64,000 nt of DNA, from contig OU015567.1 in NCBI GenBank assembly GCA_907165135.1, forward strand, positions 15,004,001 through 15,068,000. Direction: 5' to 3'. The notes beneath the pieces are model-generated. The model did not search any database. It was not told where the DNA came from and saw only the letters and a program-made list of their open reading frames with translations. This document shows positions 17,573-50,094 of the stretch, one piece after another; positions within the stretch are counted from its first letter, which is position 1; every line of letters starts with the position of its first letter. This DNA is from Oikopleura dioica (taxonomy: Eukaryota > Animalia > Chordata). A program made the position numbers and the translations under genes.

Positions 17573-20500
17573 TTAGAATTCCATTTGCTCGGCGCTGGAC
17601 TCGGTGAGGCTGAACACGAGCTGCTCGGAAGATTTGCGCTCTTGCTCGAGAAATTGAGACAATTCGGGGAAATTTTGAATAAGGCGGATTGTGTCTTGGT
17701 AGGCTCGGGTGCTGAATAACACTTGAGTAACTTTCTTTTGTAAATCAAAGTTACCTGTTTGAATCGGCAAGAATATCGGCGGAGTTATTGCTTATTCGCG
17801 CCACAACACGTACTACAGCTCGTTTAAGCTCTTCGCTTCGCTCAGCCTCCTGCTTTACAGCGTCTTGCTAAAGTTTTGTTGTGACCCTAAAATCAGAAAC
17901 ACCAGAAAGCACCTTTACACGAAGATTGAGAATTTTCTTCGAATGCTCGCAAAACTTGACGACTCTGGTTGAGAGCGACGCGGGAGATTGATGAATAACT
18001 CGCAGTAAAATGAGATAGGCGAGGAGTTTCACATCGTAGTCGTCTTCGTAACCGTTTTCGACGTTGTCGAGCAAAATCGACATGTCTAACTCCTTGTGGC
18101 ACGAGTCCAGCAACGAGTACAAACATTCAAACGCAGCCTAAAACCCATATATGAGGCAAGAAAACCGAGAAAAAGACTGACCTTGCGGATTTCAAGACCG
18201 TCGTCTATTTTATGCTTGAATGGGCCCATCATCACTTCCCTGATCAAATCAGGTCGCACCTTCGTCTCTTTATAAAGCGACTCCAACACTTCTTTGGACA
18301 AATGCCGTTTCAGCGCTTCGGCGTTGTTGTGTGCTTCCGAGTTCATGAAGGCAATTGCACTTTTGATCACTGGAATCGTCGGATCTATCGAAAACAACAG
18401 TTACATTCTGACCTTTTTGTCACTCCAATTAACCTGAAAGAAGAGCGAGGAAGGCTTTGATATCGAGTTGTTGTAAGTGACAGACGTTTTTGGCAGTAGC
18501 AAGTTGAGTTTGGCGAATTCGGAAGTCTTCGCTCTTGCATTTTTCCTAGCAAAAATATAAAAATGCGGTCTTTATAGATACTAGAAGCACCTGTAAAATA
18601 TTACATAGGCTTGGTTCGACAGATACCAGCCGCCCAAGGCACTCAGCCAGTACATTTCTGGAGCCTTCTTCTGATGCACCAGAGTACTCCTGCAATCTAG
18701 CGAATAGGTCTTTGGCAAAGGGTAGTAGAGCATCATCTGACGCGTTTTTCGTTGCTTCGCGAATAGAAACAAGCGTGAGATAGCTAATTTGGGGTGAATC
18801 GCTTGATGATAGGGTGTCTAACAGCAGTGGAATGAGCTGAGCGAGATTTCCAGATGTGACGAGGCCGATTCCAATAGCAGCGGACATCTTCACGCTTTCG
18901 GAAGCTCGAGAAAACTGCTTTAGCTGGTGTTTAACAACTGTTTCGCCAAGAGGAACCTTGCTGCCTATTTCACCAAGAGCGAGGAGTGCAAACTGCTCGA
19001 CACTCTCAATCTTTGATGACTCGACATCGCTCATAAACTGCTCAACAACTGGCTGCACAGCTTTCTCGACAGAGTCCTGCGAGTTGAATGCCCAACTGTA
19101 AGTGAAGGCGGCGAGGCATTTGGCGGAGTTGGCGATCTCATTTCGGTTCGAAATCTTATTGCTACGTTGATGTTAGTGTCAAGTTCATTAGGAGTGCATG
19201 TCTACCTGTATATGGAGTCTGTAAGCTGTCGAACAGTGGGCTTATATCTCTTCGGATAGAACTTGGCAAGCTGAGAAAGATAGAGCTCCAAAGCGATGAG
19301 TGGCTTGCCCTGTAAAAGAGAGCTCTTTACAAGATCGAGGCATTTTTGAGTAATCTCTTCGTTTTCCCTCTCTTTAGCAGAGATGCAAGCCGAGGCCAGC
19401 TCTATCGCGAGTTGAGCAACATGCAGATCACTTTCAGTAATCAAAGCGGGCACTTCAAGCAATACTTGATCAACATTTCGGAAACCATTCGAAACAAGAC
19501 TCTTCAGAAATACAAGCGAAAGCGTCCTCAATTGCCGATTTGACTTTCGCAAAAAGGATGAAAGGGTGAGAATCTGCTCGCTCACGTATTTGAGAATGAA
19601 TGATGAAATGAGGCTGTTTTCAAGCGCTTGGCTGAGAGCTTTCAACGCTGACATGCGTGTCATTTCATTCGACATTCTTTCCGCTAGAAGTCTGATCGTT
19701 TTCTCAGTTGAGCTCGATGGGATTTGATTTTTGGACAGAAGGGCACCAGCACAGAGGATGGCAGAGTCTTTGACGTCTTGATCAATGTCCGTCAGTTCTA
19801 ATTTCTCGAGAGCAGCAGCAACAGTAGGCGAGTTCAGACAAGCGGCGTCTTTTTGAACCAAAAGAAGGAGGACACGAAGACCTTCAGCGGAAATTCGATA
19901 GAAAGAGTCTTGGATAGCGCTTTCCAGCGTCGGAACTATAAGAGCCGACGCTGCGGAGGCGATTTCAGGGCTGACTTGTTTCGCGTACTTTGCGAAGAAA
20001 GAGAGAACTTCGAGTCTGACTGATGGCGAGTTATCCTTCATCAACTTGCAGATGTTAGGAAGGAGTTGGACGCTCTCTTCGCAAATGTATTTTGGACAAT
20101 TTTCGACCATGAGAGATAAAGTAGACACGATTGATTTGGCGATTTTGTTCTTCGCGTTTAGCTTTCTGCTCATCTGCGTCGAGAACAAATAAGGGTCGGA
20201 GAAGAAGGAGTCAATTTTAGGCCCAGATAAAGTGACGAATGTGTTGAAGGCGTTGATGATTTCGATGAGGACTGATTCCTCTCGTTCTCGCATTCGCTGG
20301 AGAAGGAGCATCCCCGAGGCACTCATGATCAAATCCACGTTTGAAACGGAAGAGATCATCGCGTTCAATGCCTTGGCAGCGCTTCTGCGAACCTTCCAAG
20401 ACACATCTTCGTCGTCAGAGTAGTCTTCTTGGTCCTCGTCGTCTTCTTCTTCCTCCTCCTCGTCATCGTCGTCAAATTCCTCGCAGTAGTTCGGGTCGTG

Positions 20501-21403
20501 CTGGATCGCCTTCGTCAAGATCTCCATCAGCTGTTCAAGATTATTAATCGCGCCTGGTGCTTTTCTTAAAACCGCTTCGAGGGCAGCAAGGGCCGACTCT
20601 CGGAGCTCGTCATCGTCGTCTTCTGCAATTTTGAAAACGATGCCTATAATACTTTTCAGCTGTTGCGTCGAACGCGTCGTCGTAAGTGTTCCTAAAGCTT
20701 GTAGAACGGACTTAAGTAAATCTGGCTTCAGTCCACTGCCTCGCGCTAGAAGTTCGATAACGCGGGACAGGACGCTTTCTTGGAGCGCTGGACCGGACGT
20801 TTCGATTATCTTTGATAAACTGTTGATTGCTCGTTTTCTAACTGGCTGACGATCATGTCCGAGGTATTCTAGAGCAGCATTTGCAGCTGGCTCACCGAGA
20901 GCTTGAAGATGATGAGCTTGCTTGGCGATGAGAGTCGCTAGGACATCGAGAGCATCGGTAATCACTGCAACGTTGTTCCCTCGCTCGCAAAGGGTATTTA
21001 TTAAACTCGTGGCAACCTTTCGTCCGATTGGCGAGGAAGTAGAGAGCGATTGTACCGCCGATTTGAGTCCCAAAGAGGCAATCTCTCTGATCCGCTCGTC
21101 TTTTGAGCTGTTTGGAACTGTCGTCATTCGTGTCAGTTCCATGATGATCAGGTCCTGGGACTTTTCCTTGCATCGCTCGACCGCGCGCTGGACACACTTC
21201 ACAGCCAGATTTTGAACTTCGCCTGAGGAATCTTGGAGGACTTTGATAATCGCCGAAATCAGCTTTCTTTCGCTGTCATCGTCGAGTTTGAACGAGTCTT
21301 TTTGCAATTCGAGGAGGAGATCTGTAGTTGCCATGAAACGAATATCCCTGTCGGAATTCTGCATCTTTTCCAACAGGGTCGCGAACGTGTAATTGACCGT
21401 CAT
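17573..21403 (-). CDS. CAND1: Cullin-associated NEDD8-dissociated protein 1
   Basis: LLEKMQNSDRDIRFMATTDL..KLDDDSERK, DYSDDEDVSWKVRRSAAK, DIDQDVKDSAI..NEMTRMSALKA, GPFKHKIDDGLEIRK, ENGYEDDYDVKLL. Confidence 0.97.
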
Positions 21404-22202: not shown

Positions 22203-24924
22203 CTATGCGGAGATGCCTTCTGCGCGCGCTTCGGTTTCGTAAACCAGTAATCTCCATAGTTTTATAACGAACACTTCGGCTTCTTCATCTAAAAGAGAAG
22301 GCTTATCGCTAGCTTGAGAATTTTTTCTTACCTAGAACGACTTGAATTTCGCTTAAAATTTGCTCGGGTTTAGATTCGCTGGATAACTTGTCTGTAATGA
22401 ATGTGATTAAGGTTGGTTCATCTTCTCCGATAATTTCGTTGAGCTTCTTCTTTACCCACGGGCTGATTCGTTTCTGAAGGACTCAATTAGTTTTCAGTCG
22501 AATAGAACATCCTCTCACCTCCATTAGTTCTTTTCCAAGGTATTCCCATTTCATCGGATATGCAAATAGCGGACCTTTGTCAGTCGGTATTCTTTCGATT
22601 AGTGCCTAAATGTACAAAATAAACGATGGTTGTCAACCGCGATCGACTCACCTTGACAGCGCGACGTTTCTCGTCCGCACTCATGATTTCACGGGGCTTG
22701 GGTGTCTCTCGCTTGCGTTTCCTAGCTCCTGGCAGTGATGGATCTTCGCTAGGCTCTTCCTCGTTGAAAATGGAAGGAACGTTTCGGCTGTTCTTCTTGC
22801 GCGCGGTCGGACTGTCTGATGCTTTTGGAATTGAAAGTGCTAGAAAAAGTATTTGAAAGAAGTTTCTATAAATGAAGTCGTACCAGGAAGGGAGATCGGA
22901 GGAGCCTCTGGCGGTGCTGGATTGTCTCCAAGGTCCATTTCAACGCCATCTTCGTCGTCTTCATCGCTTGTGTGGTGAACTGGCTTTTCAGGCTCATTAT
23001 TTTTCATAATCTATGAAGGTGTTTAATTAAAACTTGCTTGGCGATTATTCCGATACCTGAGAAACGAGTGGTTCATCATCAGATTCTCGCCCGGACTCGT
23101 CCGATGATTCTTCTGACTCCTCTGCATCGGTGGATGAAGTCGAATCACGTCGTTTACCCTTTTTTATCCTAAAGAAAAGTTATTTTGATCTCAAAGTGGA
23201 TAGTTGTCTCGTACCTAACATCAGGTTTGATGAATGGCTGCCAGACTTCCTCTGCTTCTTTGATGACTTTGGCGATGGCTCCATTCGGATCTAAACGAAA
23301 GGGAATGAAAAGAAATGGTCATAAGTAATTACCTGGATGGCCTTCTCCTGCGAGCTTTTCATGAAGAAGGGAAATCTCGCCTTCCTCTTTCTTCTTGTCT
23401 TTTGCATCATCTTCGATCTCTCGCTTTCGCGATTCTTGCCGCTTACTGAAGGCAGAGCCCGATCCGAAGTAGAACTTTCTGTCGTCTTTTTCGTCATTAT
23501 AGCTTTCGAGGAAATCTCGGAGCCGTCGCGCCTCTTTGGCCATTTGTTTTCTTCTTTCATTATCTCTGTATTCAATTCGATCCCATTCGCGTGCTTTTCG
23601 TCGTTCTCGAGCTTCCCAGACTTGAAGTCGTTCTTGATAAGCCGAGTGTTTCTCCTTCATCTTACGCTCTAGTCGTCGCCGCTCGAGCATTTCGTCTTCT
23701 TCTTTTCTTCTTTCGAGTGATCTTCTTCTGCGTTCTCGCTCCCTCGATCGTTCTCTTGAATTGTCCCGCGTTCTTTCTCGATTTCTTGATCTAGAACGTC
23801 TAGGTCTGCTCCTTTCCTTGCTTCTACTTCGTTTTCTGGTGCGAGCGCTCTTAGAACGAGATCGCGAGCGTTTTCTTTGCGAAGCTTCTCGACTTTTCGA
23901 TCGTTTTTTCGGCGACTTCGACCGTTCATCTTTTCTTTCGTCCGTTTTCTTGGGCTCGTCAGGCTTTTCGGACTTCTCTTTTTCGCCTGATTCCGGCTTC
24001 TTTTCTTCCTTTTTCTCCTTTTCAGGTTCTTTTTGTTCTTCCTTAGAAGCAGGAGGTGGGATATCAGCTTGGTACTCCTTGAGAAGCGCCTTTATTTCGC
24101 TTCGAACCTTGAAAAAAGGTGTGATATGCTGACGCAAAAGCTATCATCTTACTTGTTCGTCCTTTTCTCTAATCTGGGGCGAAATGACGTCCATTCCATC
24201 AGAATCCTTTTTGAGACCAACAGTAATCTTCCAGTTTTCGATGACATTTTGCGCCTGGTCATCTACTTTTATCTTTTGTGGGGATATGTCTTGTAAACCT
24301 GCTACTGTTGTTTCTGTTTTTAGAAATTTAGTCAATTGTACCTTGATACAAGTCAAGCCCGTCCCAGAAGCTGTTTCCCGCAGACAGCAAGTCCTTGGAG
24401 GAGTCGAAGTGATCGCAGAGCGGAGTCGGGCTCTTTATACTCGCAGAAGCCGAATCCTTGTTTGAAAGAAAAAAATGAGCACTTCGGCCAGGTTCGAAAT
24501 TTTTACCTTGGAGTTTGCCATTAGTGCCCTGGACTCGCTTCCAGTTGGTGACAGGGCCGACTTTCATCAAAATTTGCCTAACAAGAGTGTCGGTAACATC
24601 TTCGGCAATATTTCCAACAAAGACGGTCACTGGTGGCCCGTCGAACTGATAGTAAGCTTGGCTTACCCGAGGCTGCATAGCTTGCATCGTAGGCATCGCT
24701 AGAGTTTGCATCCTAATTGGCATCATAGGCTTCGTTATGGTCCCCTAGGTAGTCTATTTTTTACATTGGTGAAATAACTAAAATTATTGCTAAATTTTAC
24801 GCTTTATTGCGGACAGTTCCTGCATCATCGGAATCATTTGCACCGTCGGTTGTGCAACAATCTGTGGAAAGGCTTGTGGAATCCCTCCGACGCCGGATAC
24901 AGGGACCCCATTTTGAAACACCAT
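22203..24924 (-). CDS. RBM25: RNA-binding protein 25 (RRM, RE/RS-rich region, PWI domain)
   Basis: TVFVGNIAE..KVGPVTNWKRVQGTNGKLQGFGFCEY; YQERLQVWEARERRK; PWVKKKLNEIIGEDEPTL..DEEAEVFVIKLWRLLVYET. Start at 24924 requires a GA-AG intron at 24745-24819. Confidence 0.93.
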
Positions 24925-25000: not shown

Positions 25001-25672
25001 ATGGTTGACACGAATCTTATAGATTGCTGCTTCGAGATTCATGATCCTGATTGCAAGACTAAAAAATGCCAGGAGCACAGAGAAAAAGTAAGGAAAGCCG
25101 TGGAAAAAAGCAAATCAAGGCGGAGAAGAAGGAGAGTTCTTGAGCCAATAATAGCGGCATGCGATTGTACAGGTACTGAATAAATGGCCATATCAAATTT
25201 TAAGCAAATAATCGCCAATTATTTATGGGTTCGAAAAAGTGATTTACTATTGCTCAATGATTTTGAAAGACTTTGGCGTAATTCGTTGTCGCTTTACTCT
25301 ATTGAGCTAGAAGTGCTTCACAAAAGGGCATAGATCGCTAGTTGTTAAAAATGGGAGTGACTCAGCAGATCGATGAACTCGTCGAGTATCCCACCGAAAC
25401 AATTTTTATAGAGCAATAAATCCAGCAGATCGTTAATTAAATCAGGAAGTTGGTCTACTAAGAAGAAATTTAAACTATTTTACTTTAATAAGTCGGTAAG
25501 TACGTCTGATATTCATGTGTCTTATATACAGGGGAATTCGTTGAATATTTCAACAAAGAAAAAGAGTCTTCCAGAAGAAAGTGGAATTATAACGGACAAT
25601 GTGGCAAAAAAACTCCTCGGTATAAATGAGACAGCCCGCACGGACTGCCTCTCGACCCTCCCCCAGAGATAA
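25001..25672 (+). CDS. Possible small Cys/basic protein (hypothetical)
   Basis: [23 protein letters not shown]..; phase-consistent GT-AG joins to short exons near 25448-25496 and 25532-25672. No homology recognised. Confidence 0.3.
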
Positions 25673-25796
25673 ATTTGCTTTTTTCGGCAAACAAAAACAG
25701 TGCCTCCGAACACTCGTCGGCATTTTCCAGAAGGACGAGCCTTCACTTTGTTGTTTTCAAGAGAATCAGACAAGAGACTACATCCAAATTTCAGGC

Positions 25797-28700
25797 ATGG
25801 ACGTTTTCCAAGAATCCCTCAAATACCATGCTGCCGAGCCCGCCGGTAAATTCTCCGTGGAGCCAACGAAGCCGATGAATTCACAGAAAGATCTTTCGCT
25901 GGCCTACTCTCCTGGTGTCGCTCAGCTGGGCTCCAAAACCCATTTTGGAAAGATGGGAAAAGATGGGAAAAAGATGGGAAATGATGGGTTTTGAGGAAAA
26001 AACCAGACCCATCTTTTCCTTGAAAGATGGAAAATGATGGGAAATGCTTACAATTAGAAAAATGATGGGAAATGATGGTTTTTTTGGTAAAAAGATGGGT
26101 TTTTTTTTAATATAAACTTCTTATCTAGAGTTAGGCCAATCTTTAACTTCATGTTTTTCTCTAGAGTCAACTGAGATTATTATTGATTTTCAATAAATTT
26201 CCATTTAGCTACTTAGAGAATGGCTCTGCCAGCAAAACGGAAATATGATAGATCAGATCCACCAGTTTTAATTCCTTTCTTATATGGAAGAGAAGAAGGA
26301 ACCTGGCTACCCTTGTCAACACCCGGCAGCAAGCGAGCGCAAGCTGAATTCGCTCCATATTGCTCGTTTGAGGAGTTAATTTACAACGATGAAAGGACAA
26401 GATACGCTCGTTGTATTGACTCGAACTGCAGAAAACAATGTACGAAACCGGTAAATTACAAAAATATCGTCAAAACACTAACATTTTAAAAGTTTTTTTA
26501 TACAAAAGGTGAAAACGCAAATTACCTTCAAAAGAAATTTGTGGCGCATATGGACGAAAGCCCTCTCGCAAAACGAATTATTATTGTTCGACCACCAGAA
26601 AACTCACAAGCTATTCGTCAATTTTTTCGTCAGAACAAATTCTCGGATGAGGAAGTAAAGCAACTACGAAAACTTCAATGTGAAATGATCGCGAGTGGGA
26701 CTGTTCCCATATATTTCTTTTCAACACCCCAAATGGCAAATTTCATGGCAAAATACACGGAGCTCACCACGAGAAGCGCGAACACATTCGCCGATCAAGT
26801 AAAATCAAGCGACGTTACTCTAAAAAAATTGGCGAAGGATGAAGATCAGTGCATAAAAGTCCTAATCCGCGGAAATATTGATTTTATTGAAAATTCGGCG
26901 GAGTTTTGCCTTCTTCTCGACCACCAGTTTAATAGATCGCCGAAAGAATCGCATAGAGGAAATAAAAGGCTCGGCCTTGCGATGCAGCACACAAACACTG
27001 AGCTAGTGACTTCAAAGATTCTCCTGACTTACAAGCCAATGTTCTCATCAGGAAAAGATGCGAACGTTCCTGAAATTGAGAGAATACTGGAGGTAAGAGA
27101 CCTTATTTTCAATCGGAGATTTCGATGATATACCCTTAATCTGGGCTCGGAAACCTGGGTAGAAAACCTGAGTCAGGGTCTGAAAGAGCAAAAATGAAAA
27201 GCCGCGTAGCGGCTTTTTTAAAAACGAAGCCGCGAAGCGGCTTTTAATTTTTGCTCTTTCAGACCCTGACTCAGGTTTTCTTCTCAGGTTCTCGAGCCCA
27301 GCCCTTAATCTTACGACTTATTAAATAATTTAAGGGGTATGGACTACTAAATGGGGTCCGAAGAGGAAACATTCCAGTTTGCTGCGACATGGCAGCTCTC
27401 GCAATCGCCAAAAAATTATCGCCACAAAACTACAACGGTTGTTTCTCACATCATATCTCCAACTTTGTCGAGTTAATTCTGACGAACCTCGCCGAAAGAA
27501 CAAAGATTCACTGGCTAAACGCCAAAGACGAAATCGAAAAATTTGAAAACCTCGTTCAAGGGTCGAACGAGCTCAAATACGAGTCCCGAAACGCCTACTT
27601 ACGTCGGACCCAGCTTGACGAAGTCGACAAAACAGCTCTTGCCCAAATACTTGTGGAGTGCGAAATTGACTCACGTTACCTGTCAGCCAACGAGATCAAA
27701 AAGAAGGCAGAGAAGAAGAAAGCTATACTCAAGTATTATCCGACCATAGAAAAATGCGAAAAGAGTACGCGGTTCCGAAAATATGTCAAATCGCTTATAG
27801 TAAGTCAATATTTGACCGCAACCTATTTTATTTTTTAAATTTAGAATCTCAAAATAGCAAACAAGCCTATGGTCGCTCTTGAGGCCAACACACATCCGCA
27901 ATCGCACCTCGCTCTCGATCATCAGATGAACACAGTCTTTCTCGATGCGCTGATGCCATTTCTTGTCCGATTAGCACAAATGATTTCTCTAGCTGAGTCA
28001 GAAAACGTCGGAAGTGGTTTCGCACTGCGAGAATACGAGCTTTTCGGTGCAATCAGTGCTCGTTCATATTACGGAAGCGTCGGATGCCGAAAAGATATTG
28101 CGTAAGTAACTGAATACTCGACAAGAATAAAAAATATTTAAGGCGCTCTTGTTTACAATCTGTTATCGAGCATTTGTTCGGTTACTGGGTGACAAACTCT
28201 GGCGAAAAGCAAAAATCAACGATACCGAAGCGAATTCACGATAAAGAGATTGCTCAATATTATCTCTATCTTGAGACACATTTTTTAAACTTAGAGGTAA
28301 ATTAAGATTCCAAAAAAAATAACTCATAATGTAATAAGATTTTTACGGACGAATTGGATAAAAGCAAGTCCGATCCTATGATTTCTACAATGCTGAAGCT
28401 TATCGGAACCGAAACTGAATCATGGAAACAAACAGCGCACAACTATATTATCAGTTTGTCAAAATCGGTGTCGAAGCAAACTGGCAGTGCTTCTCAAGAA
28501 AGTACTCCTTCTCAAGAATGTACTCCTTCCCAAGAAAGTACTCCTTCCCAAGAATGTAATCCTTCCCAAGAATGTTCTCCTTCCCAAGAACAAATCAACG
28601 AGGTGACAAAAGGATTTCGCTCAAAGCTCTGGGCGAAAAAAGCTCAGAAGAAAAAATCGCCATCCAAAGAAAAAACCATCGAGGATGAGTTGGCCTTATA

Positions 28701-30818
28701 TGATGATCTTGATGTCGATGATTTAGAAATATGTAAGCTCAAATTTTCATTCTTAAAATTAACCGAAGTATAGTCGAGGAAAGAATGAAGGCAAAGAAGA
28801 TTCCAAAACATAACTGGCCTTATTACTTTTCAGCACAGCTGCCTGAGACGATGCCAAAACTAAAATTCGTTTCCAAACTGGTGACAAATATGTTTAAGTG
28901 TTTTAGTAACATTTTTGTAGCTCTATCTTGGGTCTAGACAGTCCTCATCTTTACTCGAAAGAATTTTCTCCCGGACTTCCAAATTCAACACGGACGATCA
29001 GCGACAAAGTCTGCTTGTGGAGACAATCGAGTCATTTACGAAATTTGGGTTCAACGAGGATGCCACAAAAATTTTCAAGACATAATTTTACTTTATATTT
29101 TTATACTTACAAAGCATATTTTTTCAAATAAAAACCCATCATTTTCCATCTTTCGATGGATTTTCCCATCATTTCCCATCTTTTGAAAACCCATCATTTC
29201 CAGACCCATCTTTTGTTTTCGGACTGGGTTTTGGAGCCCAGTCGCTCAGCCTTGCCTAGAGATCAACAAAGGAAATGGTCAAAGAATATTGAATAAAAAT
29301 CTTCATTCAAATCAGAAAAAAATGCATATTCTGAGTTCATCTTGGCAAGAAGCCAGAGCAAGGCCTCGCGCGAATATTCGATTTTGAAATAATGACCTCG
29401 CTGCGTGAGGTCATCTTTACAAAGTCAATATTACATCGTTTCTTGAGCGCGTTGCGCTAGTTCTACAGAATTTTATGACCCCTGAAAAGATCCAGCAAAG
29501 GCATATGAATACACTAACAAAGGAAACTTGGTTGCTGTTATTTCCAATGGAACAGCTGTCCTTGGTCTTGGAAACATCGGCGCATTGGCTTCAAAACCTG
29601 TTATGGAGGGCAAGGCTGTTCTGTTTAAAAAATTCGCCAAAGTCAATGCAATTGACATTGAAGTCGACACTGCTGATCCAGAAGAGCTCATTCGAACGGT
29701 CAAGCTCCTCGAGCCCTCTTTTGGAGGCGTCAACCTTGAAGGTTAAGCAGCACTTGCTCTTGACGTCATAACAGTTTGTTGATTTAGATATCAAAGGACC
29801 CGATTGCTTCAGAGTTGAGGAAGAATGCAAGAAGCAAATGAACATCCCAGTATTTCATGATGATCAACACGGTACCGCCATCATCTGCTTGGCTGGTATC
29901 ATCAACGTACTAGAAATCAAACAGATGAAAATCCAGGTTGATCAATAAACGATTCACTAAAATTTATACCCGATTTAAGGACGCTAAGATTGTCATGGTC
30001 GGAGCTGGAGCAGCTGGCATCGCTTGTATGGAAATGGTCAAAAACTACGGAGCGGACGCTAAAAAATGTTACATGCTTGATACCCGAGGTAATCAAGAAA
30101 GTCATGCCAAAGAAATTAATTTCTTCTAGGTGTTATTTACAAGGGACGAGCTGCGGGTATGAACGAGTACAAAGAAAGACACGCCATTGAGACCGACGCT
30201 CGAACGCTTGAGGACGCTATCAAGGGAGCGGATATCTTTATTGGAGTTTCATCCCCCGAGCTTCTTACTAACGAAATGCTTCTTTCTATGAACGAAAAAC
30301 CTGTTGTCTTCGGTAAATATAAACGAGATCTGAGCAATTTATAATGAATTTTAGCGATGGCAAATCCAAACCCCGAAATCACTCCCGACCGCGCTCACTC
30401 CGTAAGAGACGATTGCTTCGTGGCTACTGGCCGCTCTGACTACCCAAATCAAATCAACAACGTCATGTGTTTCCCATTCCTTTTCCGAGGCGCTCTTGAT
30501 GTTCAGGCTACGTACGTATTATCAATATTAATAAAAATTACTCTCCCTTTCAGCGAGATTAACGAGGCCATGAAAATCGCCTGTGCCGATGCCCTAGCAA
30601 AGCTGGCCAAGGAGCCCGTTCCAGACTCCGTCAAATCCGCATTCCCCGCTGAGAAGTCTTTTGAATTCGGCCGAGAATACCTCGTACCAACTCCTTTTGA
30701 CCCAAGACTGTTGACACACATTTCGATGGCCGCCGCCAAAGCCGCTTGTGATTCCGGAGTCGCAAGAAAACCAATTACCGACTGGGCTGCCTATGAAAAA
30801 CAACTGCAATCTATGTAA
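25797..30818 (+). CDS. Prokaryotic-type (MaeB-like) malic enzyme without PTA domain; 6 introns; exon 1 interrupted by a hAT transposon
   Basis: [35 protein letters not shown]|[66 protein letters not shown]. Introns 29272-29489 (GA-AG), 29742-29787, 29937-29979, 30089-30129, 30313-30354, 30512-30553. Confidence 0.93.
26220..29085 (+). CDS. Intron-containing hAT transposase (possibly one frameshift near 26545)
   Basis: N-terminal CxxxxC (BED-like), CCDMAAL, CFSHH (CxxH motif), DSRYLS, and C-terminal [24 protein letters not shown] hAT dimerisation-type motif. Confidence 0.8.
27141..27301. mobile_element. 161-bp palindromic hAT MITE in a transposase intron
   Basis: CTGGGCTCG...CGAGCCCAG ends; 8-bp TSD CCCTTAAT (27133-27140, 27302-27309); lies within the intron starting GTAAG near 27093. 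Confidence 0.93.
28492..28590 (+). repeat. 18-bp tandem repeat, 5.5 copies, encoding (SQE[S/C][T/N/S]P)n in the transposase
   Basis: TCTCAAGAAAGTACTCCT-like unit repeated in frame. Confidence 0.9.
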
Positions 30819-31223
30819 AAACAGAACAGTTCTTTGTAATAAAACACACTCAAAATAATAAATTTGTGATTAAATTAACGGGCCAGTGCCGCATTATCGA
30901 CCCACTGAAGCTATGCCCGTCTGATTTGGACACTCCGTCCCGAGAGAGTATTTCAGCATAGATCGATTTTTACAGAAAACTGCCAGCTCAACTCCTAAAG
31001 TTGTTCATAAGAAGGGGCTGATTTATTTCTGCAAGTGACAACCCTCGTTGATCAATAGTCACATTTTCGAATTAGGGAAACCGTTTCCTTGTTTAGGCTT
31101 TTCACAAAGACCCCTCACGTGAACCCCGACAGAATAGATCGACCCCATTGAAGACGCGAAATAAATTAGGAGCTTCACGTGGAGTTGAGTGCTCGGTTTC
31201 AGAGAAAGCAGACTCAGCAAAAG

Positions 31224-31512
31224 ATGCAAAAGTGCCCGACTTGCCAAAAGACAGTGTATTTTGCGGAGAGAGTTAGGAGCATCGGTCAGGATTGGCACAA
31301 GCTTTGCCTCAAATGCGTCAATTGCAACAAGCTTCTAGGTCAGTACTTTTCGAATTAATTATAAACATAATGATTATACAGTCGCCGGAAAGCATGCCGA
31401 ACACGACGGAAAACCTTACTGTGATGTCCCTTGCTACGCTGGCCTTTTCGGACCAAGAGGCTTCGGAAGAGGACGTTGTGAATCCCATGTTTATGACTTT
31501 CAGAATAAATAA
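31224..31512 (+). CDS. CRIP1: Cysteine-rich protein 1-like single LIM protein (2 exons)
   Basis: [38 protein letters not shown]|[31 protein letters not shown]; intron 31339-31381. Missing from the ORF track. Confidence 0.92.
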
Positions 31513-49970: not shown

Positions 49971-50094
49971 TTTGGCTCGGCAACCTGTCTGGAAAACCTG
50001 AGTCGGGATCTCAAAGATGTTAAGTGAAAAGCCGCATAGCGGCTATTTTTTTAAGGAAGCCGCAAACACCTTTGCTACAGGTTGCTGAGCCCAG
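49971..50094. mobile_element. Older copy of the CTGGGCTC-ended MITE family
   Basis: GGCTCGGCAACCTGT ... ACAGGTTGCTGAGCCCAG; internal AAACCTGAGTCGGG and AAAAGCCGCATAGCGGCT; flanks AGTGCAGT / ATTGTAGT match 6 of 8. Confidence 0.7.

What the first reader, a model, noticed from the sequence alone, without database searches (positions are those of the whole stretch)
25797..30818. Bacterial MaeB-type malic enzyme domesticated with spliceosomal introns (HGT candidate)
Seen: the spliced protein (~415 aa) has the motifs [54 protein letters not shown] and PFDPRL, six short introns (one GA-AG) and a TTTCAG acceptor just before the ATG. Known: these motifs define the prokaryotic small-subunit/MaeB class; animal ME1-3 belong to a different ~570-600 aa class. 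The protein ends where the phosphotransacetylase domain of proteobacterial MaeB would begin. Introns and animal neighbours argue against contamination. Inference: horizontal acquisition followed by intron gain.
Basis: partly seen in the sequence, partly recalled or inferred. Interest (0 to 1): 0.85.

Follow-up and report, generated by a model that had tools for sequence, protein, structure and literature searches.

The report
Foreign bacterial-type malic enzyme in Oikopleura
The tunicate Oikopleura dioica carries a working, intron-containing gene for a bacterial-type malic enzyme that other animals seem to lack, and its nearest relatives are ciliate and dinoflagellate genes, so it was probably acquired by horizontal transfer, though not clearly straight from a bacterium.

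Summary
Window 25797-30818 (+) encodes a 421-aa class II (MaeB-type) malic enzyme. It has no phosphotransacetylase (PTA) domain. It has six introns: five GT-AG of 41-46 nt and one GA-AG of 218 nt. A 3,324-nt transposon insertion in exon 1 makes a seventh interruption.

The organism is Oikopleura dioica, and the protein is already deposited unstudied as E4X2V4_OIKDI. Polyadenylated spliced mRNAs exist. dN/dS between lineages is 0.023. The protein keeps 114 of 116 columns that are invariant in bacteria. Neighbouring genes are animal genes.

Orthologues of 75-82% identity occur in other larvacean-like genomes and share intron positions 844 and 1001. The gene is therefore an old resident whose introns arose after arrival.

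In mixture-model trees the larvacean clade is sister to PTA-less enzymes of spirotrich ciliates and dinoflagellate-like organisms (support 100/98). Both together are sister to alphaproteobacterial MaeB. AU tests do not reject other placements (p 0.18-0.19).

Horizontal acquisition followed by intron gain is supported. A direct bacterial donor is not shown.

The transposon is a polymorphic insertion. The empty site stands in another DNA run and in the Norwegian reference. The scan had already noted this transposon on the same stretch (s1-338633).

The parts
25660..25796 (+). 5' UTR; the start is approximate
   Evidence: The metatranscriptome contig starts at 25745 and is collinear with the genome. 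In the Norwegian lineage, mRNA contigs L092-L094 carry 133-142 nt upstream of the ATG, and L092's first 140 nt are 100% collinear with genomic L091. One of them begins right after a sequencing adapter. The homologous motif in the window lies near 25655-25665.
25797..25925 (+). Coding exon 1, first part (codons 1-43). It ends with the left copy of the 8-bp target-site duplication TCGCTCAG (25918-25925).
25926..29241 (+). Autonomous TIR DNA transposon of 3,316 nt inserted in phase 0 after codon 43. It has 26-nt imperfect TIRs and GATGGGAAA-type subterminal repeats. It encodes an intron-split protein of about 790 aa and holds a nested 161-nt palindromic MITE at 27141-27301.
   Evidence: TIRs and repeats. 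The TE protein equals P0389, annotated at another O. dioica locus, mapping to 26220-29034. P0389 has no Pfam match. The empty site stands in DNA run X5 and in the Norwegian reference L091.
29242..29249 (+). Right copy of the 8-bp target-site duplication TCGCTCAG
29250..29271 (+). Rest of ancestral exon 1 (22 nt, ...PCLEINK)
   Evidence: It is contiguous with 25797-25925 in L091 and in the mRNA contig.
29272..29489 (+). Intron of 218 nt with GA-AG ends, phase 1
   Evidence: It is removed in mRNA contig X7. A GA donor at the same position is present in Norwegian O. dioica. The intron is absent from the L009 species. GA-AG introns are known to be frequent in O. dioica (PMC7072748).
29490..29741 (+). 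Exon with [20 protein letters not shown] ... [10 protein letters not shown]
   Evidence: Pfam malic N-terminal domain, E 2.5e-16. PDB MaeB matches, E 2.5e-34.
29742..29787 (+). GT-AG intron, 46 nt (CDS position 403). The position is shared with the L014 species, where the intron is GA-AG.
29788..29936 (+). Exon (DIKGPDCF ... FHDDQHGTA ...)
29937..29979 (+). GT-AG intron, 43 nt (CDS position 552). Seen only in O. dioica.
29980..30088 (+). Exon with the GAGAAG dinucleotide-binding motif
30089..30129 (+). GT-AG intron, 41 nt (CDS position 661). Seen only in O. dioica; the other species have an intron at 639 instead.
30130..30312 (+). Exon
30313..30354 (+). GT-AG intron, 42 nt (CDS position 844, phase 1). 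Shared with the L009 and L014 species.
30355..30511 (+). Exon with GRSDYPNQ
30512..30553 (+). GT-AG intron, 42 nt (CDS position 1001, phase 2). Shared with the L009 and L014 species.
30554..30818 (+). Last coding exon (PFDPRL ...), with the stop codon at 30816-30818
30819..30862 (+). 3' UTR with AATAAA at 30838-30843 and 30857-30862. The poly(A) addition site is at about 30862.
   Evidence: A run of 16 A follows 30862 in contig X7. Motif positions.

Best explanation
This is a real nuclear gene of Oikopleura dioica. It encodes the catalytic module (malic N-terminal domain plus NAD(P)-binding domain) of a class II, MaeB-type malic enzyme of the alphaproteobacterial sequence lineage.

By inference, the enzyme is cytosolic. 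It would oxidatively decarboxylate malate to pyruvate and CO2 while reducing NADP+. Because the PTA domain through which bacterial MaeB senses acetyl-CoA is missing, it would lack acetyl-CoA control.

The gene is foreign to animals. An ancestor of at least the oikopleurid larvaceans acquired it horizontally. The source was either an alveolate protist that already had a PTA-less copy or a related alphaproteobacterium-like donor. The best tree favours a common origin with the ciliate genes.

After integration the gene gained spliceosomal introns. Positions 639, 844 and 1001 are old. The others, including the host-typical GA-AG introns, are lineage-specific.

In the haplotype of this window, exon 1 has recently been interrupted by an autonomous TIR transposon with an 8-bp duplication. 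This insertion is polymorphic and is not part of the gene's normal structure.

Shown: the gene model, expression, splicing, selection, integration, orthologues, the tree position and the transposon polymorphism. Inferred: the enzymatic activity, cofactor, localisation, direction of transfer and donor.
For: - Gene model and family. The nearest solved structure is the MaeB entry 6zn4 (E 7.5e-158).
- Organism and prior deposit: CBY17957.1/E4X2V4_OIKDI is 96% identical; the OKI2018_I69 chr2 model is 99.5% identical.
- Spliced polyadenylated mRNA: X7; L093, L094.
- Selection: dN/dS 0.023 at dS 1.37 against L001; host-like GC.
- Conservation: 114 of 116 bacterial-invariant columns kept.
- Animal neighbours: CAND1, RBM25-like and LIM. 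RBM25 is the neighbour again in the Norwegian assembly.
- Orthologues in other larvacean-like genomes have shared and private introns.
- Careful LG+C20 tree: larvaceans 100/100, larvaceans plus ciliate-like 100/98, plus alphaproteobacteria 100/100. This holds after adding 10 more bacteria.
- The ciliate nature of the sister clade: Stylonychia, plus C4A4/G4T4-telomere nanochromosomes L003-L006 and L012.
- Four derived residues are shared with the ciliate clade, against one shared with alphaproteobacteria.
- No other animal is among the top 120 hits.
- No paper in the library links Oikopleura with malic enzyme.
Against: - AU tests do not reject larvaceans grouping with alphaproteobacteria (p 0.19) or branching outside ciliates plus alphaproteobacteria (p 0.18). 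The donor and the number of transfers are therefore open.
- The larvacean stem is long (0.54 changes per site), so attraction to the ciliate branch cannot be excluded.
- Absence from other animals rests on top-hit lists, not on an exhaustive survey.
- Two bulk RNA runs of the same species label gave only 1 and 5 reads.
- Enzyme activity, cofactor and localisation are untested.
Confidence: 0.75

Rival explanations
1. Direct transfer from an alphaproteobacterium (free-living Rhodobacterales-like, or a Rickettsiales-like symbiont with a PTA-less enzyme) into a larvacean ancestor, independent of the ciliate acquisition.
For: - Identity to Marivivens MaeB (64.9%) equals identity to the ciliate enzymes (about 65%).
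- AU does not reject larvaceans plus alphaproteobacteria (p 0.19).
- PTA-less enzymes exist in Rickettsiales, including symbionts of tunicates and ciliates.
Against: - The ML trees (three methods and samplings) always place larvaceans with the ciliate-like clade, with support 98-100.
- Alphaproteobacteria are monophyletic without them (99/89).
- No bacterial genome or MAG found is closer than about 65%.
Confidence: 0.3
2. An ancient eukaryotic gene, for example of mitochondrial origin, that was inherited vertically and lost in almost all lineages except alveolates and larvaceans.
For: The eukaryotic clade is sister to the sampled alphaproteobacteria as a whole rather than nested in one order.
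Against: - It would need independent losses in every other animal lineage and most eukaryote groups.
- The only named eukaryotes among the best hits are spirotrich ciliates and one dinoflagellate transcriptome.
- None of the larvacean intron positions could be compared with other eukaryotes.
Confidence: 0.08
3. Contamination or assembly artefact: a bacterial or protist sequence wrongly placed in the tunicate assembly.
For: None found.
Against: - Six spliceosomal introns of host type, all spliced in poly(A) mRNA.
- The same locus, with the same upstream neighbour, is present in two independent O. dioica assemblies.
- An independent DNA run has a contig running from the last exon into the next gene (30552-31303).
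- Composition is host-like.
Confidence: 0.01

Closest known systems
Hybrid-type bacterial MaeB (NADP-malic enzyme with C-terminal PTA domain; solved structures 6zn4/6zng, 8jzo, 9kru)
   Same: It shares the same two catalytic domains, with 57-65% identity over the whole 421 aa. It keeps 114 of 116 invariant columns and is collinear from residue 5 to the end.
   Different: It has no PTA domain. The ORF stops where that domain would start, and the poly(A) site follows 44 nt later. The acetyl-CoA regulation described for hybrid MaeB (PMC12704298, abstract only) has no structural basis here. The gene is also eukaryotic, with introns.
PTA-less malic enzymes of spirotrich ciliates (Stylonychia lemnae 'malic enzyme' P0290; marine nanochromosome genes P0381, P0368, P0310)
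   Same: It is the nearest clade in all trees, at about 65% identity. It is also PTA-less and shares derived residues such as Cys in NNVMCFPF.
   Different: Some ciliate proteins, such as Stylonychia P0290, carry N-terminal extensions. The ciliate genes sit on gene-sized chromosomes, and the copies fetched show no introns. Monophyly with the larvacean genes is favoured but is not proven by AU.
Animal malic enzymes ME1-3 (class I, about 570-600 aa)
   Same: They catalyse the same overall reaction and belong to the same superfamily (established knowledge; class naming from PMC5958461).
   Different: No class I enzyme appears among the PDB matches at E <= 0.001 for exon 3, or at E <= 1e-20 for the whole protein. 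Size and sequence class both differ.
Known tunicate horizontal acquisitions (cellulose synthase CesA, GH6-1 in Ciona; PMC10334666)
   Same: A gene of bacterial type that is fixed, expressed and intron-bearing in a tunicate lineage.
   Different: This is a core carbon-metabolism enzyme, not a cellulose enzyme. It has been seen so far only in larvacean-like sequences, and its nearest relatives are protist genes.

Membership tests
Class II (MaeB/YtsJ-type) malic enzyme | Malic N-terminal domain (PF00390) followed by the NAD(P)-binding domain (PF03949) in a module of about 400-440 aa | tested here: met
   Exon 3 hits PF00390. The 96%-identical O. dioica protein P0387 hits PF00390 (9e-28) and PF03949 (3.9e-24).
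Class II (MaeB/YtsJ-type) malic enzyme | Closer in sequence to prokaryote-type enzymes than to class I (ME1-3, SfcA) | tested here: met
   All 12 PDB matches are MaeB, archaeal, Thermotoga or Entamoeba-type enzymes, the best at E 7.5e-158. There is no class I chain.
Class II (MaeB/YtsJ-type) malic enzyme | Conserved catalytic and cofactor-binding residues | tested here: met
   114 of 116 columns that are at least 97% conserved in 33 bacterial sequences are retained. The two changes are L148C and A175V. The role of individual residues was not mapped.
Class II (MaeB/YtsJ-type) malic enzyme | Malate oxidative decarboxylation with NADP+ | not testable with these tools
   This needs an enzyme assay. 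All the close characterised relatives are named NADP-dependent.
Hybrid-type MaeB (ME + PTA) | C-terminal phosphotransacetylase-like domain (PF01515) | tested here: not met
   The ORF ends at residue 421, the stop codon is at 30816-30818 and the poly(A) site is at 30862. There is no PF01515 hit in P0387.
Horizontally acquired gene in an animal | Physically integrated in the host genome | tested here: met
   Host-type introns, animal flanking genes, two assemblies and an independent DNA run.
Horizontally acquired gene in an animal | Phylogeny places it among non-animal sequences with support | tested here: met
   It sits inside the ciliate-like plus alphaproteobacterial clade with support 100/100.
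Horizontally acquired gene in an animal | Absent from related animals | tested here: inconclusive
   No other named animal is among the 120 best hits of P0176. The one animal-labelled hit elsewhere, the spider protein P0200, matches at the same 61-62% level as the Wolbachia enzymes. No exhaustive search of tunicate genomes was possible.
Horizontally acquired gene in an animal | Expressed and under purifying selection | tested here: met
   Poly(A) mRNA contigs. dN/dS 0.023.
hAT-superfamily transposon (the insertion in exon 1) | 8-bp target-site duplication and short TIRs | tested here: met
   TCGCTCAG is duplicated, and the TIRs are 26 nt at 85%.
hAT-superfamily transposon (the insertion in exon 1) | hAT transposase domains (for example the dimerisation domain) | tested here: not met
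   The 792-aa element protein P0389 and the three longest ORFs have no Pfam match at E <= 0.01. Superfamily assignment therefore rests on TSD length alone.

The most novel reading that the evidence does not exclude
The larvacean gene came from an alveolate protist (spirotrich ciliate or dinoflagellate lineage), not from a bacterium. That would be a two-step relay: alphaproteobacterium to alveolate, with loss of the PTA domain, and then alveolate to a chordate. It would make this a protist-to-animal transfer of a central metabolic enzyme, with a datable series of intron gains afterwards.
Probability: 0.35. Interest if true: 0.65.

Novelty: new member of a known kind. Interest (0 to 1): 0.5.

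Why it matters
Well-supported horizontal acquisitions in chordates are few; the cellulose genes of tunicates are the standard examples. This case adds a core carbon and NADPH-metabolism enzyme that is fixed across several larvacean species.

The intron record is unusually readable. There are three old positions and several lineage-specific ones, including GA-AG introns, so it can serve as a natural experiment on intron gain in the fast-evolving Oikopleura genome.

The sister relation to ciliate and dinoflagellate enzymes raises the question of transfer between eukaryotes. More sampling would make that question testable.

The polymorphic transposon in exon 1 gives a natural null or hypomorphic allele for functional study.

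Tried and rejected
- Alignment A1 of all exon pieces with one homologue was misaligned by MAFFT, so I dropped it for A2.
- The exhaustive representative search could only take an 83-aa exon. It returned mostly fragments, which served only to obtain full-length ids.
- The ESM Atlas returned only bacterial clusters, with no resolution.
- Bulk RNA runs X22 and X23 gave 1 and 5 reads. They therefore say nothing about splicing or about the transposon-bearing allele.
- Cluster look-ups of ten sister-clade proteins gave no taxon names. I inferred taxonomy from telomeres instead.
- The bacterial genome scan used O. dioica-specific words. It found only genomes at or below 60% identity and missed the 65% Rhodobacterales.
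- Pfam gave nothing for the transposon ORFs.
- The in-frame upstream ATG at 25626 was considered as a targeting extension and rejected. The mRNA 5' ends in the sister lineage start downstream of the homologous point.
- Trans-splicing at TTTCAG was rejected for lack of support.
- Intron 2 was checked for repeat copies in the window; there are none.
- Whether O. dioica still has a class I malic enzyme could not be tested, because no class I query was available by reference.
Full report
**Observation**

Translating the region shows exon-sized blocks of a malic enzyme on the + strand.
- Exon 3 alone matches the Pfam malic N-terminal domain.
- The same exon matches twelve solved prokaryote-type malic enzymes and no class I enzyme.
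- The protein aligns from residue 5 to residue 421 with the first 421-425 residues of 750-aa bacterial MaeB proteins. It stops exactly where their PTA domain starts.

**Interruptions**

Five introns are 41-46 nt with GT-AG ends. One is 218 nt with GA-AG ends.

The remaining 3,324 nt between 25925 and 29250 is not an intron. It is a 3,316-nt element with these features:
- 26-nt terminal inverted repeats and GATGGGAAA-type subterminal repeats;
- an 8-bp direct duplication of the target, TCGCTCAG;
- a protein of about 790 aa that is annotated at another O. dioica locus (P0389) and has no Pfam match.

**Reads**

One metatranscriptome contig (X7, 1,378 nt, about 97% identical) ends in poly(A) after 30862 and reproduces all junctions, including the GA-AG one. 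Its 27 unplaced letters are exactly what exon 1's end plus the 22-nt piece 29250-29271 predict.

The skip of 3,324 nt also stands in a DNA run of the same species label (X5, one contig, 39 nt on the short side). The empty site therefore exists as DNA, and the mRNA contig does not show splicing of the element. X5 also has a contig running from the last exon into the next gene.

Two bulk RNA runs held almost no reads.

**Organism and prior record**

A 421-aa protein that is 94.8% identical (P0176) validates the model end to end. Its cluster holds:
- Oikopleura dioica CBY17957.1 / E4X2V4_OIKDI, 'Malic enzyme' (96% identical);
- an Okinawa-assembly model of 1,133 aa (99.5% identical). This model is a chimera of the transposon protein and malic enzyme exons.

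The Norwegian reference locus (L091) has the same six introns, including the GA donor, and the same upstream RBM25-like neighbour. Its exon 1 is uninterrupted.

GA-AG introns are a known peculiarity of O. dioica (PMC7072748). mRNA contigs of that lineage are polyadenylated and carry a 133-142-nt genome-collinear 5' UTR that reads through the TTTCAG before the ATG. This gives no support for trans-splicing there. It also excludes the in-frame upstream ATG at 25626.

**Function and constraint**
- Between the window and L001, dN/dS is 0.023 at dS 1.37.
- GC and GC3 resemble the neighbouring host genes.
- 114 of 116 columns conserved in bacteria are kept.
- The nearest solved structure is the MaeB entry 6zn4 (E 7.5e-158).
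- There is no N-terminal extension relative to the bacterial proteins.

From these I infer a cytosolic NADP-malic enzyme without the PTA-mediated acetyl-CoA control. Nothing here tests activity.

**Relatives**

Searching with P0176 gave three tiers of hits:
- a set of 420-473-aa proteins at 75-82% identity, on mRNA-sized contigs;
- about 65% identical PTA-less proteins, including Stylonychia lemnae;
- partial alphaproteobacterial MaeB proteins at 61-65%.

Genomic contigs of three of the 75-82% species show intron-split genes. One of these contigs carries other, animal-type neighbours such as a haem peroxidase.

Intron positions, in window CDS coordinates:

| Species | Intron positions |
|---|---|
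| O. dioica | 151 (GA-AG), 403, 552, 661, 844, 1001 |
| L014 species | 250, 403 (GA-AG), 639, 844, 1001 |
| L009 species | 184, 343 (GA-AG), 639, 844, 1001 |
| L017 species (partial coverage) | 639 |

Positions 844 and 1001 therefore predate the divergence of these species, and intron turnover continued afterwards.

**Sister clade**

Several members lie on 1.6-1.9-kb DNA contigs capped by C4A4/G4T4 repeats, the gene-sized chromosomes of spirotrich ciliates (L003-L006 and L012). Two GC-rich sublineages lack telomeres. One of them is sister to a sequence labelled Zooxanthella nutricula, a dinoflagellate.

**Trees**

FastTree, quick IQ-TREE and careful IQ-TREE (both IQ-TREE runs under LG+C20+F+G4 PMSF) agree on the following:
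- larvaceans are monophyletic (100/100);
- they are sister to the ciliate-like clade (100/98);
- the two together are sister to a monophyletic alphaproteobacterial group (99/89);
- all three groups together are separated from other bacteria (100/100).

Adding ten further bacteria, including Rickettsiales symbionts, Peribacteria and Mucispirillum, did not break the eukaryotic clade (SH-aLRT 98).

Four derived residues are shared by larvaceans and ciliates, against one shared with alphaproteobacteria.

AU tests do not reject larvaceans plus alphaproteobacteria (p 0.19) or ciliates plus alphaproteobacteria (p 0.18).

**Verdict**

The gene is a foreign-origin, long-resident, functional larvacean gene of the alphaproteobacterial MaeB lineage. 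Horizontal acquisition with later intron gain is well supported. The donor, bacterium or alveolate, is unresolved, with the best tree favouring a common origin with ciliate genes.

The protein is already deposited. No paper in the searchable library links Oikopleura with malic enzyme, and a 2026 compendium of metazoan transfers mentions neither. I file it as a new member of a known kind.

Noticed in passing
window 27141-27301 (also 49974-50066): A 161-nt near-perfect palindromic MITE is nested inside the transposon. Its ends resemble the transposon's TIR (GGTTCTCGAGCCCAGC). In DNA run X5 its summed word depth is about 170,000 against about 127 for single-copy flanks, with many variant internal deletions.
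   Followed up: partly
window 26220-30815; protein P0388 (OKI2018_I69 chr2.g8216): The public Okinawa annotation fuses the transposon's ~750-aa coding region to malic enzyme exons 2-8 in one 1,133-aa model. This is an annotation chimera caused by the insertion.
   Followed up: yes
window 25626-25796: The frame is open upstream of the start codon back to an ATG at 25626, which would add 57 Arg/Lys-rich residues. It lies upstream of the mRNA 5' ends inferred from the sister lineage, so it is probably not translated.
   Followed up: partly
L009:10415-11028 and L014:469-596: Other larvacean-like species also have GA-AG introns in this gene, at different positions (343 and 403). The position-403 intron is GT-AG in O. 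dioica but GA-AG in the L014 species.
   Followed up: partly
L003-L006, L012: Complete ciliate nanochromosomes of 1.6-1.9 kb with C4A4/G4T4 telomeres, each carrying only the malic enzyme gene, recur in Tara Oceans metagenomes. A sequence labelled as the dinoflagellate Zooxanthella nutricula nests among them. This suggests either contamination of that transcriptome or a further transfer between eukaryotes.
   Followed up: no
protein P0200: A spider (Trichonephila) 'NADP-dependent malic enzyme' on a 640-kb contig is 72% identical to the Rickettsiales-like query P0080, the same level as the Wolbachia enzymes. It is probably Wolbachia sequence in the spider assembly.
   Followed up: no
window 19202-21403 (-), 23319-24726 (-), 31179 onward (+): The neighbours are ordinary animal genes: a CAND1-like 733-aa ORF, an RBM25-like RRM/PWI protein and a LIM-domain (CRP-like) gene that starts about 320 nt after the malic enzyme poly(A) site on the same strand.
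   Followed up: partly
same genome, other windows (s1-331771, s1-342449, s1-326496, s1-336683): The scan lists four further intron-bearing bacterial-type genes in this genome as transfer candidates: DUF3050, GH29 fucosidase, 3-hydroxybutyrate dehydrogenase and DUF3472. I did not examine them here.
   Followed up: no
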